The translations under genes and the position numbers were made by a program. A stretch of DNA of 64,000 nucleotides from Paraphysomonas bandaiensis (Eukaryota > Protista > Chrysophyceae): NCBI GenBank assembly GCA_965644295.1, contig CBFFRP010000324.1, forward strand, positions 186,001 through 250,000, written 5' to 3'. The notes beneath the pieces are model-generated. The model worked only from the letters and a program-made list of their open reading frames with translations, ran no database searches and was not told where the DNA came from. Shown here piece by piece: positions 58,191 to 64,000 of this stretch. Within the stretch, counting starts at the first letter, position 1; the number at the start of each line of letters is the position of its first letter.

Positions 58191-61100
58191 TCACGGCTCT
58201 ACTCTTGGGGCTAATATTTCGGTTGGAGGACCACGACTGCCACTGCCATCCGAATTCGCTGCTCCCATTCTAGGTACTCGTAGTAACCGACCAGCAGGTC
58301 TCTGTTTCTGAATGGAATCTAGTTTACCATTAGCACTACGTAATGACTCACGGAGAGATTGGAGTGTGTTTTGAAGAGATGAAACCTTTCCACGAATAAC
58401 TTCCTCAACGCCTTCCTCTACCGTTGCATCTACTGTGTCAGTAGATACTGATACTTGGCGTGATATGGTGCCTTTCCTGTGCGGAGCTACTTTCTGATTA
58501 GAATCCAGAACAGACAATGTGTCTTGAATTAAGCTCAGTCTTTTCTCGATAACAGTGCTTCGATGTTCAGAATGCCCCCCATGGCTTGCGGTGTCCTCAC
58601 TGCTTCGACGTATGATTAGATCACCAGATACATCTGTTTCAAGTGCATGCTCTGACTCTACTTTCTCTTGTAGACCAAGCAATCCAATAGGAATCCAACT
58701 GACATCGCCATTCTCCATGCATTGGCGGACATACATCTCCAGGCTGGTGTCTTGACTACGGGGTTGTTGCCAAATCCTCATTACAAAATATAGATAATTC
58801 CACATATTGTGTGTCACAGTTCTGTGCGAATAGAAGTCCACCGTCTCTCTGGTTTTTCGTTTGTCGAATTCGTGCCTGTCAATTCCACATATGAAGCATC
58901 GGTTGGAAATATGCTCTTCTCTTTCCTCCTTGATATTACGGAGCTCCCCGAAAGTATTGATGATAATACCAAAAAATATATTCCTCAGAATTACAACTAT
59001 TATGAAGTAAATCCCTACATCAAGAATCATTCTATTGCTGGTTGTGTCGACCATGTACTGCCCAAGACCTTCAGTTGCTCTGATGCCATAGTTGAAGGCC
59101 AGCAACACACTATGATACATACTTGTATTTTCTTCAGCAAACTGATAATAGTCAGTTCGAAAAAATAGGAATATGACTGCGGCTGTTATGTAAAGAGCAA
59201 TAACCATTATGATAAAAGTTGAAAACAACTGCCGAGCTGGAATCACAACAGCGTATAGAACATCTCTACTCGTTGAATCAAGAACAATGTAGTCTAGCAG
59301 CAACACAGACAAAAACAAGTAATGCTTCCACAAAGCAAGAACTGTTACTCCCAGGTAACAAAAATACCAAAGCGGTAATATGTCTGTTATAGCACATGCA
59401 AAGGACATCAGCATACTGTGACCTGATGATATATTTGTATTGAATGACACAGGAACACGGACGACCAAAGACACCAAAAATATTACAGCTGAAAATACTA
59501 CGTGAACGATATTTAATCCATATAGGACGCGTCGAATTTCATCTGGTAGGCGAATATTACCCGTGGATCTTTCTTCCACGTAGTACACTGTCAAAAGGAT
59601 ATTCATAGCAATAACATTGGCGAACATTATTCTAGAGAGAGTTCCAATGAAGTGCCACACATTACCAACACCATAAGATTTAAGAGTTTGTTGGTGAACC
59701 GCTTCACGGTGTAAGCCCTCGGCATGTTTCATAAAATCTTTTAATTTCAACTCTTGGCTCACACAATTCATGTGCTCAATAATTTTTCCTTTACTACTCT
59801 CAGATAGGTCCTTCGCAAGTTCCGGAATGTGAAAATAGTGCCTATGTAGGTGTTGGTCCCAAACTACTTCCACAGAAGAGATATCACTGTCTATACATTT
59901 CTGAGCATTTGAAGGCATTTCGACATTCTTGTCATTGAGGGATTTCAAAAACACAAGATATTTGGCCTGAAGTCGAGTTAACTTTTCAACATCTGTAGTG
60001 AGACCAAATTCGTCAGTGATACTTGGAACAATTAAAACGTTTAAGACGTTGACTTCTATAGCTGTTTGAACTCGTTCCAGAACGACTGAGTCGCTGGGAA
60101 GGCCTTCTATAGAAGCCCGCAGCACATCAATTACAAATTCTTTCAAAGTTTCGGAATCAGAACCCCATTCTACAGTATAATTGTACGATGGGCGGGCACT
60201 TCTCATCAGTCTGTTCATCGCAACGAGCATGTCAGTGTGCAGAACAAAATGCTCTTGACATCCTTTGCTGGGGCCATGTAGAATACCCAATATCGTGTGT
60301 ATCACACGAATGGCAACCTTTGTGCAAGTGTGTCCTTCGAGCCTACTCAACACATCAATAAAATTGGCAAGAATATCCAATATGTTGACAAAGCGGGTAT
60401 TTCCCTCCTGTTCTCTTAGAATATCTTTGTTACTCATAAAATTTCCATCACACATCGCCCTCAAGAGAGTCAACATAACCATACAATCTGGTAGAGGAGA
60501 AGAAAAATCGGAGTTCTCCGAGGCACCTTCAAGTTCCGCATAGCGCTTCTGCATTTCAATTATCTCTTTCGTTTGCTCAAAAAAGAGAGTCGAATCCTTC
60601 TCAGATAAATATGTGTTTATTGTTTTTTGCACATTAATGTTTCCTCCACGCCTCACAAGTATAACAGTGAGCAACTTCGCAGCTTCGATGCTGAGCTTAA
60701 CGTCTATACCTATGGCAATGAGATCAAGGCACATGAACGTAACACCGCAATTGTCAAAGACATCGTGAAACCAAGAAGTGTCGGACACCTCAACACCTTG
60801 AAGAGGATCCGAAATTTCTTCGATTTTATATCCGATTTGCTTTTCAAGAATGTACCGCAATGTACGCACAAACCACATTGCAGATGTTGCCACATTTTTC
60901 TGGAGCGAGCAGGTAGTTGACGTCTTTTCAACTTGTGTCCGCATGTAGTTAGTAAGTTTAAGAATAAAAGGTTCTAATCGAATGTCTGACACACTTTGCT
61001 CCGCAATCATGGGTATTCTTGTGAATGTTTGAATGGATGCCTCTTGAAGATACTCATCCGGAACTTTAATCTTTTCCAAGAATGCTTGAAATTGACGGCG

Positions 61101-64000
61101 ATAAAAAATCTGCTGTATTTCATCGGATAGAGATTTCTGGCGATTGACTTGGCTCCTCCGCTTAGCTCTTTGCTGTGCCACATTATTGTCGACATTAGTA
61201 TTCACTTCATCCATTGCAAAATCGCTGTGAACTCCACATAAACAAGCGATGGTATCCGATAATGACTCGATGCACTGAGACCCAAGAAAATCCCGCTTCT
61301 TTTCCAAAAGTTCACGAATAGAACAGCCAAATCTGTATATAATAGCATTGATATCAGATTCCGTTCGTTGCGTGCCCTCAAATGATAATTCGCTTTCATA
61401 CGCCGTCGCATCATAAAATGCAGCAAAATCGAATTCATTGAAAAACTTAATCGCAACCTTGGTGCATATGTGCATCCAATCCGTGTTTTGCTGTCTAAAG
61501 TTTGATACAGGACTGCTTTTGCGGAGCCAAAGTGGAAGTTGCGCTTGTGCTTGCTCAAAGAATAGAGTGGCCTCCTCAATAAATCGCCACATTAACTCAG
61601 AAGCTTCGATTAATTCAGGCTTTGAATCAAGTGCTTCTGAAAGAACAAGACCGAGAGCTTTCTTCACGCAAAATATAGTTCCAGGATCTAATATTGCAGC
61701 TACTACGTCGTCCAAAGGGTATACAGCCTGCAATTTCGGTCCCAACTTACAGCCAGCAAGTAGAGTGATAAGATTGACATGATATCGTAGCTCTGGTGAC
61801 AACTCGTCCTCATTCGGGCACTTCTCAGCATTCAAATAAGGTGCCATCGCAGCAGCACGTTCTCTGTACTCATTTGACTCAGGTGAACAACACCATAATA
61901 AAATATGGGGAGCCCTATCAGCATTTGTTAAGTGTTTGGCAATCTCACTTCGAACCGCTGCTATGCCGCTGTCACTGGTATCTGCCAGATCAGTCATGCC
62001 AACAAACAGATCCAAGTACTCGGGCTTGCGTCCATTGGTTACTATCTTTTGCATAAACTCCGCCAAGTACCTCCTTTGGCATTGCTTTATCAGAAACCTA
62101 TTTCCAGAGAGTATAGAGCGAACAACATTCGAACTACGGACATCATCATCAACTCTATCCAAGAACCAAGTTAGATACGTGAAAACAATTTCTTGGTTCG
62201 TCTCATTGTTTCTGACGAAGTTACTTAGTAAATCATTACATGCGCGAATGATTTTCTTAATAACAACATGAGGTTCCCCCAAACTCGCATCAAGCAGAGC
62301 CACCTGAACGGCCATAATGTTGTCAATTGCACCCATGTTCGCCAATATTTTCTGAACTTCTGGGTCCTCTGTGTGCGGTGGTTCAAATTCAATTATTTTG
62401 GTAGGCGCATTAACCTTTAGAAGGTCTGTCAATTCTACCATTATGTCATGAAGCTGATCCGCAACCCTGTTATCTTCAGCAGTCTTCAATTCCCCCCATA
62501 TTTCAAAGTTCTCAGCAAACTTTTTCATCAATTTCAACTGCGACGATATGGAAAGGAACTTATCCTCAACTTTCGGATTTGATATTATTTGAATGTTTTC
62601 CATTGCTTCACGTAAGCGTTGCTTTTCACTTTTATGTATCATAAGCAAATATAACGCCTCCTGTACTAAATTGGGATCCGAATACATAACAATATCCAAT
62701 AGCGCATCATCGAACTTTGCAGGAATAAAGGCTGCACAGCTGTCGTCTGCATCCATGGTTCTCATGTAGATATCAACAGCATCACGACTTTTCCCATCAC
62801 TTTCGGCATTATACCATTGCACGAACGCGTGAAATGATGACGACAGTTTTCTATCTTGAATTCTGTCGTGAACAATAGACAAAACACGCAAAATTCCGGC
62901 AATAGTTCTGACTTCGCTCTCCGTTGTCGTTTTGTATCGTGCTGGCATTGTCCACGGTTTAACTACCTGTGCACCCTCAGCTATCTTTTTCAGCAACCTG
63001 GCTGCTCGAATCACTCTTATCAGTCTAAGTATACGAACCGTTTTTAGCGTTTTGGCAAAATTTGCAGCTCTTCCCAAGCCGGGAGAATCTATAGAAAGAA
63101 GAACGATATCCAAAGTGACGACGGCGATATCAATAAGATTAAATGGTGACTGGCAAAACGTGTGGACGTTTTCATACACAGCAGCGTAGCAGTACATTCG
63201 AATCGTCAATTCCAATATGAAAACAATGGAAACAGATAAATCAAAGGCATACAACCCAGCAAACGTTTCGGAGGGGTAAAACACTTGGACAGCAGAGAAA
63301 ACAGTCGTTACAACAACCAATGTGAGCACAAATGTCAAAAATTTCATCGACTCGAACACTCGCAAAAGCTTCAATTCGAATTTGTCACTGAGTTCAACTC
63401 CACCTCCTTCGTCCTTAAATCGCATGGATTTATGACTTTTTCCACGAGACAGGTTATTCGACGAAAGAGTCAGCTTCTTCGATCTCGCTCTATGTATCGC
63501 ATCACTCTTCTCCGACGGCATCACTTTTCGAGAGGCACGAAACGACTTTCCCACTGACGATAGCGATGACATGACTTGTCCTTTCACACTAGCACTTTTA
63601 CTAGCACGCGCCTTCGCAGCAGCTGCAGCAACGACGGATTCCAACGTCATGTACTCATCATTATCTTCATCATCCTCATCATCACTTGCAGCAACATCCT
63701 CCACTACAGTAGAGTACAGACGATGGTCATCAAGAGCATCCACGAGTGGGTTTATTATGTCTTGGAGTTGTTCAGGTGTACTGTAGTAGCCAAACCGAAC
63801 CAAATCAAGTAGTAGATCCATCATTTCTGCGGACAACTCATCGCACTTAGTTGTATCAAAGCTACTATGCAAGTAATCAGATATAATTTGTTGTAGCAAT
63901 CCGAAGCAGTACGGGCTACCCGAATGGTATTTATTAAAACTGCTGTGATGGCCTCCCTCTAAATCTGACGAAGTCTTAATAAGACGAGGAAATCTGGCCT
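58191..64000 (-). CDS. IP3-receptor/RyR-family channel with an inserted voltage-sensor domain; 5' end lies beyond the window
   Basis: Frame is open to base 64000. IP3R-like motifs LVRFGYY, FVRNNETNQ and LRAMCDGN...LREQ, six C-terminal TMs, NIFFGIIINTFGELR, zinc finger CFICG...H....HNMWNYLYF, and an additional S1-S4 bundle at about 62980-63360. Confidence 0.92.
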   Translation of the reverse strand, partial: ARFPRLIKTSSDLEGGHHSSFNKYHSGSPYCFGLLQQIISDYLHSSFDTTKCDELSAEMMDLLLDLVRFGYYSTPEQLQDIINPLVDALDDHRLYSTVVEDVAASDDEDDEDNDEYMTLESVVAAAAAKARASKSASVKGQVMSSLSSVGKSFRASRKVMPSEKSDAIHRARSKKLTLSSNNLSRGKSHKSMRFKDEGGGVELSDKFELKLLRVFESMKFLTFVLTLVVVTTVFSAVQVFYPSETFAGLYAFDLSVSIVFILELTIRMYCYAAVYENVHTFCQSPFNLIDIAVVTLDIVLLSIDSPGLGRAANFAKTLKTVRILRLIRVIRAARLLKKIAEGAQVVKPWTMPARYKTTTESEVRTIAGILRVLSIVHDRIQDRKLSSSFHAFVQWYNAESDGKSRDAVDIYMRTMDADDSCAAFIPAKFDDALLDIVMYSDPNLVQEALYLLMIHKSEKQRLREAMENIQIISNPKVEDKFLSISSQLKLMKKFAENFEIWGELKTAEDNRVADQLHDIMVELTDLLKVNAPTKIIEFEPPHTEDPEVQKILANMGAIDNIMAVQVALLDASLGEPHVVIKKIIRACNDLLSNFVRNNETNQEIVFTYLTWFLDRVDDDVRSSNVVRSILSGNRFLIKQCQRRYLAEFMQKIVTNGRKPEYLDLFVGMTDLADTSDSGIAAVRSEIAKHLTNADRAPHILLWCCSPESNEYRERAAAMAPYLNAEKCPNEDELSPELRYHVNLITLLAGCKLGPKLQAVYPLDDVVAAILDPGTIFCVKKALGLVLSEALDSKPELIEASELMWRFIEEATLFFEQAQAQLPLWLRKSSPVSNFRQQNTDWMHICTKVAIKFFNEFDFAAFYDATAYESELSFEGTQRTESDINAIIYRFGCSIRELLEKKRDFLGSQCIESLSDTIACLCGVHSDFAMDEVNTNVDNNVAQQRAKRRSQVNRQKSLSDEIQQIFYRRQFQAFLEKIKVPDEYLQEASIQTFTRIPMIAEQSVSDIRLEPFILKLTNYMRTQVEKTSTTCSLQKNVATSAMWFVRTLRYILEKQIGYKIEEISDPLQGVEVSDTSWFHDVFDNCGVTFMCLDLIAIGIDVKLSIEAAKLLTVILVRRGGNINVQKTINTYLSEKDSTLFFEQTKEIIEMQKRYAELEGASENSDFSSPLPDCMVMLTLLRAMCDGNFMSNKDILREQEGNTRFVNILDILANFIDVLSRLEGHTCTKVAIRVIHTILGILHGPSKGCQEHFVLHTDMLVAMNRLMRSARPSYNYTVEWGSDSETLKEFVIDVLRASIEGLPSDSVVLERVQTAIEVNVLNVLIVPSITDEFGLTTDVEKLTRLQAKYLVFLKSLNDKNVEMPSNAQKCIDSDISSVEVVWDQHLHRHYFHIPELAKDLSESSKGKIIEHMNCVSQELKLKDFMKHAEGLHREAVHQQTLKSYGVGNVWHFIGTLSRIMFANVIAMNILLTVYYVEERSTGNIRLPDEIRRVLYGLNIVHVVFSAVIFLVSLVVRVPVSFNTNISSGHSMLMSFACAITDILPLWYFCYLGVTVLALWKHYLFLSVLLLDYIVLDSTSRDVLYAVVIPARQLFSTFIIMVIALYITAAVIFLFFRTDYYQFAEENTSMYHSVLLAFNYGIRATEGLGQYMVDTTSNRMILDVGIYFIIVVILRNIFFGIIINTFGELRNIKEEREEHISNRCFICGIDRHEFDKRKTRETVDFYSHRTVTHNMWNYLYFVMRIWQQPRSQDTSLEMYVRQCMENGDVSWIPIGLLGLQEKVESEHALETDVSGDLIIRRSSEDTASHGGHSEHRSTVIEKRLSLIQDTLSVLDSNQKVAPHRKGTISRQVSVSTDTVDATVEEGVEEVIRGKVSSLQNTLQSLRESLRSANGKLDSIQKQRPAGRLLRVPRMGAANSDGSGSRGPPTEILAPRVEP

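What the first reader, a model, noticed from the sequence alone, without database searches (positions are those of the whole stretch)
62980..63360. Complete voltage-sensor domain inserted into an IP3-receptor-family channel: candidate single-polypeptide voltage-coupled release channel
Seen: four extra hydrophobic helices lie in-frame, with no intron, between two conserved IP3R solenoid motifs, LLDLVRFGYY...LVDALD and EVRTIAGILRVLSIVHDRIQD. These correspond to LIYFGFY...LLAILD and KLKIIEILQFILNVRLD of animal IP3Rs, which flank a variable cytosolic loop. The helices are S1 (FLTFVLTLVVVTTVFSAVQV), S2 with the F..E...R charge-transfer motif (SIVFILELTIRMY), S3 with N.ID (PFNLIDIAVVTLDIV), and S4 KTLKTVRILRLIRVIRAARLLK with eight basic residues at every third position. 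The normal six-TM IP3R pore is still present about 1100 residues downstream. Established: canonical IP3Rs and RyRs are ligand-gated and have no charged S4; in skeletal muscle RyR1 borrows voltage sensing from CaV1.1 in trans. Inference: S4 joins the next solenoid helix by a linker of only about 20 aa, so sensor movement could gate the channel. The sensor could sit in the same membrane or in an apposed plasma membrane, a fused analogue of excitation-release coupling. I do not know a described channel with this architecture but cannot verify novelty.
Basis: partly seen in the sequence, partly recalled or inferred. Interest (0 to 1): 0.95.

Follow-up and report, generated by a model that had tools for sequence, protein, structure and literature searches.

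The report
IP3-receptor channel with built-in voltage sensor
A marine single-celled eukaryote expresses a family of IP3-receptor-type calcium-release channels that carry a complete, strongly conserved voltage-sensor domain spliced into their cytosolic scaffold, an architecture I could not find described and which may let one protein turn membrane voltage directly into calcium release.

Summary
On the minus strand, window 62967-63347 encodes a canonical S1-S4 voltage-sensor domain (VSD). Pfam Ion_trans matches S1-S4 only (E 1e-13 to 1e-15). S4 has eight basic residues, one at every third position, and the F..E...R / N..D charge-transfer motifs are present. The VSD lies in-frame inside a 2244-codon exon of an IP3R-family gene that has Ins145_P3_rec, MIR, RIH, RIH_assoc and a 6-TM pore.

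It is not an artefact. Spliced transcript contigs remove three tiny upstream introns but run uninterrupted across the VSD. The genome holds 8 paralogues with the same insert. About 74 diverged relatives share it; one is from the chrysophyte Epipyxis and the rest are environmental. Seven S4 charges are 82-96% conserved, the S2/S3 counter-charges 92-100%.

The insert sits in a loop of the helical (HD/CLD) domain. AlphaFold flanks align to human IP3R3 781-1366 (Z 21) and the VSD to NaV/CatSper sensors (Z 13-14). The sampled IP3-contact residues are lost.

Best reading: a voltage-modulated release channel in which S4 pulls on the HD through a short conserved linker. Function, and the membrane that holds the VSD, are untested. 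The plasma-membrane/ER "fused excitation-coupling" version is unlikely on biogenesis grounds. Eight literature searches found no description. The scan had already flagged paralogues elsewhere in this genome.

The parts
58191..64000 (-). In-window part of the large exon of the IP3R-family gene. The open frame continues to G000:C324:250920, outside the window. Stop codon at 58191-58193.
   Evidence: ORF list; Pfam Ion_trans, RIH and RIH_assoc; transcript contigs collinear over L003 4500-7920.
63726..63812 (-). HD-domain helices just before the insert (LLDLVRFGYY...LVDALD; ORF 372-400).
   Evidence: Aligns to IP3R2 868-878, weakly; helical in the AF2 model.
63381..63725 (-). Acidic, low-complexity N-terminal linker of the insert (ORF 401-515). 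Mostly disordered and variable in length among relatives.
   Evidence: pLDDT below 50 for model residues 143-213; gappy alignment columns; in-frame 3-nt length polymorphism here.
63351..63380 (-). Pre-S1 (S0) helix, ORF 516-525.
   Evidence: AF2 helix 217-226; E525 acidic in 85% of relatives.
63279..63347 (-). S1 transmembrane helix, ORF 527-549.
   Evidence: AF2 helix; hydropathy peak 2.16; Pfam Ion_trans.
63174..63260 (-). S2, ORF 556-584, with outer acid D562 and charge-transfer residues F569, E572 and R576.
   Evidence: Across 74 relatives: F569 96%, E572 100% D/E, R576 96%.
63090..63164 (-). S3, ORF 588-612, with N596, D599 and D606.
   Evidence: N596 81%, D599 100%, D606 92% conserved.
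62967..63065 (-). S4, ORF 621-653, with eight basic residues at every third position.
   Evidence: Translation; seven of the positions are 82-96% basic in 74 relatives, and 57 of 74 carry 7-8 of the 8.
62922..62966 (-). Short conserved S4-to-HD linker, ORF 654-668 (W658, P661, R663, Y664).
   Evidence: P661 89%, R663 99%, Y664 88% conserved. R631 to R663 spans 32-36 residues in 66 of 74 relatives. pLDDT 70-88.
62799..62921 (-). 41-residue HD helix that resumes the IP3R solenoid (EVRTIAGILRVLSIVHDRIQD...), ORF 669-709.
   Evidence: AF2 helix 370-410; conserved D691, F701 and W704; the solenoid aligns to hIP3R3 across the insert.
62004..62354 (-). RIH domain (ORF 858-974).
   Evidence: Pfam PF01365, E 1.8e-9.
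60213..60476 (-). RIH_assoc domain (ORF 1484-1571).
   Evidence: Pfam PF08454, E 1.8e-7.
58941..59657 (-). IP3R-type six-helix pore module (ORF 1757-1995). The selectivity-filter position (59058-59075) reads TEGLGQ instead of GGGVGD.
   Evidence: phmmer to IP3R3 at E 1e-36, with the alignment shown; hydropathy; weak Ion_trans match to profile positions 28-238.

Best explanation
This is a genuine, expressed gene for a tetrameric IP3R-family cation-release channel. Its central helical domain (HD/CLD) carries an inserted, fully canonical S1-S4 voltage-sensor domain of the CaV/NaV type.

Proposed mechanism (inferred, not shown): both ends of the four-helix sensor face the cytosol, so it can sit in a membrane while interrupting a cytosolic loop. 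Changes in the potential across that membrane move the seven or eight S4 charges through the F569/E572/D599 transfer centre. The displacement passes through the short, conserved linker of nearly fixed length (W..P.RY) to the long HD helix. From there it travels along the HD-ARM3 route that animal IP3Rs use to carry ligand-binding signals to the S6 gate. Voltage would thus replace or bias IP3 as the stimulus; the sampled IP3-contact residues are lost.

Both transmembrane modules of one polypeptide are inserted co-translationally. The sensor therefore most likely sits in the same membrane system as the pore: an electrically polarised store, or the cell surface if the whole channel traffics there.
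For: Shown:
- Pfam finds an S1-S4-only Ion_trans match inside an Ins145_P3_rec-MIR-RIH-RIH_assoc-pore protein.
- The AF2 model (pLDDT 79) gives four helices plus S0. The flanks align to hIP3R3 781-1366 (Z 21.3). The insert aligns to NaV1.7 VSD-IV/III and CatSper (Z 13.4-14.2).
- The best sequence match in the PDB is the CaV1.1 repeat-III sensor (E 1.7e-12).
- Transcript contigs from two runs splice out three GT..AG introns of 46-54 nt upstream, yet are collinear across the VSD. A DNA run keeps those introns.
- Eight paralogues in this genome keep the motifs.
- A profile search found 52 hits at E<=1e-30. About 74 representatives cover both the VSD and the IP3R-specific linker.
- Of 46 family pieces, 45 have Ion_trans and 43 have RIH.
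- Gating charges and counter-charges are 82-100% conserved, and linker length is nearly constant.
- IP3R1 R265/T266/T267/G268/R269 are replaced by S/N/S/I/Q.

From the literature: the HD (E693-L1102) moves during gating, and the change propagates to the HD-ARM3 interface (PMC9663519).
Against: - There are no functional data of any kind.
- In animal IP3Rs the HD lies well above the membrane (my recollection of the structures, not measured here). A 15-residue linker may therefore be too short for a same-membrane arrangement without a changed quaternary architecture.
- The ER membrane is usually thought to carry little potential, so a sensor there would have little to sense.
- A test for contact between the VSD and the pore module gave no answer.
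- The filter Asp is replaced (TEGLGQ), so Ca2+ selectivity is unproven.
Confidence: 0.6

Rival explanations
1. Two-membrane (trans) coupling. The pore sits in a store membrane and the four VSDs sit in an apposed membrane: the plasma membrane, or a neighbouring cisterna of the same organelle. One polypeptide then spans a contact site, as a fused analogue of CaV1.1-RyR1 voltage-induced Ca2+ release.
For: The C-terminal linker is short, conserved and confidently modelled, which suggests the VSD is held close to the HD rather than dangling towards the pore's membrane. The HD is distant from the pore's membrane in animal IP3Rs (recollection). The nearest PDB sequence relative of the sensor is a CaV1.1 VSD. 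Voltage-induced release via two proteins exists in vertebrate muscle and in C. elegans muscle (PMC11087772, listed).
Against: No known pathway inserts two transmembrane modules of one chain into different organelles. SRP/Sec61 would place both in the ER, and they would traffic together. No single polypeptide with helical bundles in two bilayers is known to me. Only the version with two sheets of the same membrane system escapes this objection. The geometry was not testable here.
Confidence: 0.15
2. The VSD fold is kept mainly as a membrane anchor, assembly module or lipid-interaction module. It would tether the cytosolic scaffold to the membrane or fix the channel at particular sites, without voltage controlling gating.
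For: The function is untested. VSD-like folds with non-sensing roles exist, such as the uncharged S1-S4 bundles of IP3R/RyR/TRP channels (established knowledge). The complex test gave no information.
Against: An anchor would not need seven basic S4 positions at 82-96% conservation, nor a 96-100% conserved F/E/D charge-transfer centre, across ~74 relatives that are often under 40% identical overall. Buried charges are costly, and they decay in pseudo-sensors.
Confidence: 0.15
3. The inserted VSD is itself a conduction pathway (Hv1-like proton path or omega-type cation path) that supplies counter-current or pH coupling during release.
For: Some stand-alone VSDs conduct ions (reviewed in PMC10651576, cited within). 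Release channels need counter-ion flux (established knowledge).
Against: There is no Hv1 signature: no acidic selectivity residue in mid-S1 and no RxWRxxR in S4. An uninterrupted ladder of seven or eight charges with an intact Phe gap is the pattern of non-conducting sensors.
Confidence: 0.05
4. Artefact: an assembly chimera, a mis-joined contig, or a segment that is removed from the mRNA.
For: None found.
Against: An independent DNA run and two spliced RNA assemblies are collinear across it. There are eight paralogues on different contigs. A relative encodes the whole architecture in one 3041-codon frame on a 446-kb contig. Dozens of further relatives share it.
Confidence: 0.01

Closest known systems
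Animal IP3 receptors (ITPR1-3)
   Same: Same domain order: N-terminal suppressor/beta-trefoil, MIR, RIH, HD, RIH, RIH_assoc, six-helix pore with conserved S6, and a C-terminal CxxC...H...H motif. The solenoid around the insert superposes on hIP3R3 781-1366 (Z 21.3). The pore aligns at E 1e-36.
   Different: A ~270-residue insert (disordered linker plus full VSD) replaces a variable HD loop. The five beta-trefoil IP3-contact residues are all substituted. The filter reads TEGLGQ, not GGGVGD. Animal IP3Rs have no charged S4.
CaV1.1-RyR1 voltage-induced Ca2+ release (excitation-contraction coupling)
   Same: Same logic: a CaV-type voltage sensor controlling a channel of the RyR/IP3R superfamily through protein mechanics rather than Ca2+ entry. 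The inserted VSD's best PDB sequence match is CaV1.1 repeat III.
   Different: That system uses two proteins in two membranes plus adaptors. Here it is one polypeptide, an IP3R-type channel rather than a RyR-type (no SPRY or RyR-repeat hits), and probably one membrane system.
Voltage-sensing phosphatases (Ci-VSP/TPTE)
   Same: Closest mechanistic analogue: a stand-alone S1-S4 sensor whose S4 is joined by a short linker to a cytosolic effector domain, not to a pore (established knowledge).
   Different: There the effector is an enzyme at the C-terminus. Here the sensor is inserted internally in a solenoid, so both ends are tied to the effector, and the effector is a channel scaffold.
Two-pore channels (TPC1/TPC3) of endomembranes
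   Same: Precedent for working voltage sensors in intracellular Ca2+-store membranes (established knowledge; PMC12839299, listed).
   Different: TPC sensors are the canonical S1-S4 adjacent to their own pore (S5-S6), coupled by an S4-S5 linker. Here the pore module keeps its own uncharged S1-S4, and the charged sensor lies about 1100 residues away in the sequence.
Protist IP3R/RyR-like release channels (Paramecium CRCs; oomycete ITPR homologues)
   Same: Divergent protist members of the superfamily, several lacking a recognisable IP3-binding site (PMC4820453; PMC3213138, listed).
   Different: None of the papers read mentions an extra voltage sensor. The oomycete speciality described there is PKD-RyR-domain fusions.

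Membership tests
IP3R/RyR superfamily (RIR-CaC) | N-terminal Ins145_P3_rec (suppressor/beta-trefoil) and MIR domains | tested here: met
   The upstream exon ORF has PF08709 at E 1.3e-18 and PF02815 at E 9.3e-8. phmmer to the IP3R1 N-terminus gives E 7.8e-19.
IP3R/RyR superfamily (RIR-CaC) | RIH and RIH_assoc domains | tested here: met
   PF01365 at E 1.8e-9 and PF08454 at E 1.8e-7, both above the curated cut-offs.
IP3R/RyR superfamily (RIR-CaC) | C-terminal six-helix pore with conserved S6 and a post-S6 Cys/His motif | tested here: met
   phmmer to IP3R3 at E 1e-36 and to RyR1 at E 2e-23, with the alignment shown; six hydropathy peaks.
IP3-gated IP3R in the strict sense | IP3-coordinating residues of beta-trefoil 2 (R265, T266, T267, G268, R269 of IP3R1; T267 and R269 are listed as contacts in PMC9663519) | tested here: not met
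   The aligned residues are S, N, S, I and Q. The ARM1-side contacts (K508, R511, Y567-K569) were not aligned here.
IP3-gated IP3R in the strict sense | GGGVGD selectivity filter | tested here: not met
   The aligned filter reads TEGLGQ.
Ryanodine receptor | SPRY domains and RyR repeats | tested here: not met
   No such Pfam hits on the 2244-aa ORF or the upstream ORF at E<=0.1.
Voltage-sensor domain of the voltage-gated cation channel superfamily | Four-helix S1-S4 bundle | tested here: met
   AF2 helices S1-S4. VIA-align to NaV1.7 VSD-IV (Z 14.2, rmsd 3.7 over 132 residues) and to CatSper (Z 13.4, rmsd 2.3). For helical bundles, Z near 13 is only moderately specific, but Pfam and phmmer agree.
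Voltage-sensor domain of the voltage-gated cation channel superfamily | S4 with at least four Arg/Lys at every third position | tested here: met
   Eight in this protein. 57 of 74 relatives have 7-8.
Voltage-sensor domain of the voltage-gated cation channel superfamily | Gating-charge transfer centre (S2 Phe and acid three residues later, S3 Asp) plus an outer S2 acid | tested here: met
   F569 96%, E572 100%, D599 100% conserved; D562 acidic in 69%.
Voltage-sensor domain of the voltage-gated cation channel superfamily | Voltage-driven charge movement | not testable with these tools
   Needs electrophysiology or voltage-clamp fluorometry.
Canonical voltage-gated channel (VSD coupled to its own pore) | S4-S5 linker leading directly into S5-P-S6 | tested here: not met
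   The Ion_trans match stops at profile position 112-113 of 241. S4 is followed by the HD solenoid, and the pore is about 1100 residues away.

The most novel reading that the evidence does not exclude
These proteins form a previously unrecognised class of voltage-gated intracellular release channel. A CaV-type sensor embedded in the cytosolic scaffold of an IP3R gates the distant pore allosterically. Possibly it does so while spanning two apposed membranes, which would make it a one-protein version of excitation-release coupling and the first polypeptide with helical bundles in two bilayers.
Probability: 0.45. Interest if true: 0.95.

Novelty: new variant of a known kind. Interest (0 to 1): 0.85.

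Why it matters
Voltage control of the RyR/IP3R superfamily is known only through a separate CaV protein, in muscle of animals.

A single-chain version would show that coupling of voltage to store release evolved independently in protists. It would offer a minimal, genetically tractable system for asking how a voltage sensor can drive a large allosteric scaffold. It would also raise a sharp structural question: how does a membrane domain fit into a loop that in animal receptors is cytosolic and lies far from the bilayer?

The family is large, old and expressed in marine plankton. It may therefore underlie fast Ca2+ responses, such as feeding, flagellar or scale-secretion behaviour, in abundant heterotrophic flagellates. 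It could also inspire engineered voltage-controlled release channels.

Tried and rejected
1. Complex prediction of the VSD piece against the pore module returned "no answer" (score 0.00). It is not evidence either way.

2. Naming more species failed. All three cluster look-ups gave only one named member, Epipyxis. Word-indexed searches with a distant member and with the family alignment found almost nothing new. The ESM Atlas feature search gave only generic IP3R C-terminal clusters below 0.8.

3. The Ca2+-activation site in the RIH_assoc region could not be aligned to solved IP3Rs with a single sequence (no hit at E<=0.01), so I make no claim about it.

4. Model coordinates are not exposed. 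I could not measure the angle or distance between the VSD and the solenoid, nor the height of the insertion loop in solved IP3Rs.

5. Assembly chimera or spliced-out segment: rejected.

6. Hv1-like proton channel: rejected as the main reading for lack of signature residues.

7. The upstream exons were searched one by one, by reference.

8. Eight literature searches and five papers searched for key terms gave no description of this architecture (searches; papers). Subscription journals are not covered, so prior description is not excluded.
Full report
WHAT IS THERE

The finding lies on the minus strand, inside a very long open frame. In the window it runs from the stop codon at 58191 to the window end. 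The window is G000:C324:186001-250000. Fetching the neighbouring DNA (L003 = C324:243000-252999) shows a 2244-codon open frame (L003 1192-7926). A second frame of 587 codons lies upstream.

Pfam places these domains on the large frame:
- Ion_trans at residues 529-648, matching only profile positions 4-112 of 241, i.e. S1-S4 (E 1e-15)
- RIH at 858-974
- RIH_assoc at 1484-1571

On the upstream frame it places Ins145_P3_rec, MIR and a weak RIH. The C-terminal 545 residues align to human IP3R3 at E 1e-36 and to RyR1 at E 2e-23. S6 and the Cys/His motif after it are conserved. The gene is therefore an IP3R-family channel with an extra S1-S4 module.

S4 has basic residues at K625, K628, R631, R634, R637, R640, R643 and K646.

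IS IT REAL?

Transcript evidence. Two runs (X1, X2) contain contigs of 8.3 and 8.9 kb that skip three tiny introns with GT..AG ends on the coding strand. The introns are 46, 54 and 50 nt long, at L003 7921-7966, 8046-8099 and 8175-8224, just beyond the window end. The same contigs are collinear from L003 4500 to 7920, which covers the VSD (L003 5968-6348). A DNA contig from run X9 retains the introns. The contigs are thus spliced RNA, and the sensor is kept in the message. A marine plankton metatranscriptome (X4) also holds a 269-nt identical piece over S4 and the linker.

Paralogues. Searching the whole assembly with the VSD-plus-linker peptide finds eight loci on different contigs, each inside an open frame of 1600-2500 codons. 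All eight keep the S2, S3 and S4 motifs; only C409 has lost the second S3 acid. RIH_assoc hits fall on the same eight loci and on two more genes (C395, C144) that show no VSD.

Relatives elsewhere. The first homology search gave nine long proteins with the same Pfam set. One of them (P0003) encodes Ins145_P3_rec-RIH-VSD-RIH-RIH_assoc in a single 3041-codon frame on a 446-kb contig. A profile of the region, scored against 1.84 billion representative proteins, gave 52 hits at E<=1e-30 and 484 at E<=1e-10. Four-domain CaV/NaV-like proteins appear only from about E 1e-20. About 74 representatives cover both the sensor and the IP3R-specific stretch after S4. Of 46 long pieces centred on the sensor, 45 have Ion_trans and 43 have RIH. 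Assembly or annotation artefact is excluded.

CONSERVATION

Across those 74 sequences, many of which are under 40% identical to the query over the wider region, the functional residues of a voltage sensor are the best conserved positions:

| Element | Residue (conservation) |
|---|---|
| S2 | F569 (96%), E572 (100% acidic), R576 (96%) |
| S3 | N596 (81%), D599 (100%), D606 (92%) |
| S4 basic positions | K625 82%, K628 96%, R631 96%, R634 93%, R637 96%, R640 88%, R643 88% |
| Post-S4 linker | P661 (89%), R663 (99%), Y664 (88%) |

Fifty-seven of 74 carry seven or eight charges at the eight S4 positions. The distance from R631 to the conserved R663 is 32-36 residues in 66 of 74. The linker before S1, by contrast, is gappy and of variable length.

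A quick, unrooted tree puts this genome's eight paralogues into at least four supported clades, interleaved with environmental sequences. The subfamilies are therefore older than the species sampled.

STRUCTURE AND INSERTION SITE

AlphaFold2, with a 46-sequence alignment of ORF residues 300-1030, gave mean pLDDT 79 and pTM 0.64. The model's segments, in ORF numbering:

| Segment | ORF residues | Note |
|---|---|---|
| N-terminal linker | 442-512 | disordered |
| S0 | 516-525 | |
| S1 | 527-549 | |
| S2 | 556-584 | |
| S3 | 588-612 | |
| S4 | 621-653 | |
| Linker | 654-668 | pLDDT 70-88 |
| HD helix | 669-709 | 41 residues |

The whole model aligns to human IP3R3 781-1366 (Z 21.3, rmsd 3.7 A over 423 residues). 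The solenoid therefore continues across the insert. The insert itself aligns to NaV1.7 VSD-IV (Z 14.2), NaV1.7 VSD-III and a CatSper sensor (Z 13.4, rmsd 2.3 A).

By sequence, the motif before the insert aligns, weakly, to IP3R2 868-878. The region after it aligns to IP3R1 1062-1133. The best PDB match of the sensor is CaV1.1 repeat III (E 1.7e-12).

The host is therefore the helical domain, HD (IP3R1 E693-L1102), also called CLD, not ARM1. That domain shows pronounced motion on activation, and the change propagates to the HD-ARM3 interface (PMC9663519, read). From memory, the equivalent animal loop is disordered and contains the SIII splice site; I did not verify this.

OTHER FEATURES OF THE CHANNEL

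The five beta-trefoil residues that contact IP3 in IP3R1 (R265, T266, T267, G268, R269) align to S, N, S, I and Q. This agrees with an earlier scan note (s1-442409), which also says that sensor-less cousins share the loss; I did not test that part. The filter GGGVGD is replaced by TEGLGQ. No SPRY or RyR repeats were found.

THE ORGANISM

The assembly is 62.6 Mb with about 41% G+C. It has no light-harvesting-complex hit but several silicon-transporter loci. Near-identical fragments occur in marine metatranscriptomes. The one named relative comes from the chrysophyte Epipyxis.

I infer a colourless, silica-forming, marine stramenopile of chrysophyte type. Other agents of the scan reached similar views. 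This is an inference, not an identification.

MECHANISM

Shown: the architecture, its expression and its conservation.

Inferred: a four-helix sensor has both ends on the cytosolic side, so it can interrupt a cytosolic loop without any topological conflict. The pattern of selection falls on the charges, the transfer centre and the length and sequence of the S4-HD linker, not on the N-terminal linker. That is what one expects if S4 movement is transmitted mechanically to the HD helix and onward to ARM3 and the gate. The nearest mechanistic analogue is the voltage-sensing phosphatase, where S4 drives a cytosolic domain through a short linker.

Which membrane holds the sensor is open. Co-translational insertion argues that sensor and pore share one membrane system. 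In that case the channel would report the potential of a polarised store (as TPC1 does in plant vacuoles) or of the cell surface.

Against a simple coplanar arrangement: the HD of animal IP3Rs lies well above the bilayer (recollection, not measured), and the linker has only 15 residues. That seems feasible only for two sheets of the same compartment.

NOVELTY

Eight full-text searches, and term searches within five papers, found no mention of a voltage sensor inside an IP3R/RyR-family protein (searches; papers). The papers included reviews of oomycete Ca2+ channels, a survey of ER Ca2+ machinery and a 623-species survey of voltage-gated-like channels. All family members but one come from unnamed metagenomic or run-derived assemblies. 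Subscription literature is not covered, so this is absence of evidence within the corpus searched.

The scan's own first readers flagged the same architecture in two other pieces of this genome (s1-450056 and s1-450059). These correspond to the paralogues found.

PROCEDURE NOTE

The gene model is spliced. I searched the exons separately, by reference, and did not build or submit a joined protein.

VERDICT

Noticed in passing
window 63507 (L003 6508), in the low-complexity linker before S1: All three organism-A runs laid, RNA and DNA (X1, X2, X9), carry an extra in-frame TTG relative to the assembly, plus four single-base differences across the 5.5-kb stretch laid (L003 4816, 4986, 6124 and 9847). 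This looks like strain or allele variation, or a small assembly error.
   Followed up: no
G000:C324:250920-251223 (L003 7921-8224), just beyond the window end: Three very short introns (46, 54 and 50 nt, GT..AG) separate two mini-exons of 79 and 75 nt, between the N-terminal exon and the 2244-codon exon. Paralogue C426 seems to have a ~40-nt intron, with an in-frame TAA, inside the S3-S4 loop.
   Followed up: partly
window 59058-59075: The selectivity-filter position reads TEGLGQ where IP3Rs have GGGVGD. The Asp needed for Ca2+ permeation in animal IP3Rs (recollection) is Gln, and a Glu appears three residues earlier.
   Followed up: partly
L003 8215-9975 (upstream exon, outside the window): IP3-contact residues R265, T266, T267, G268 and R269 of IP3R1 align to S, N, S, I and Q, so classical IP3 binding is unlikely.
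   Followed up: partly
G000 contigs C348, C406, C398, C150, C405, C298, C149: There are many silicon-transporter (PF03842) loci, most as tandem half-repeats within one frame, in a genome with no light-harvesting-complex hit. This fits a colourless silica-forming protist.
   Followed up: no
alignment A2 (one of the 46 family pieces): One relative carries an EF-hand pair (E 2.6e-13) within the 871-residue piece around its voltage sensor. That would be a possible Ca2+ input added next to the sensor. I did not identify which member it is.
   Followed up: no
G000:C395:122081-130120 (L016) and G000:C144 (L017): Two further RIH_assoc-bearing genes have no detectable voltage sensor and no other Pfam hit. 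The first is a 2679-codon frame. They are very divergent members of the superfamily.
   Followed up: partly
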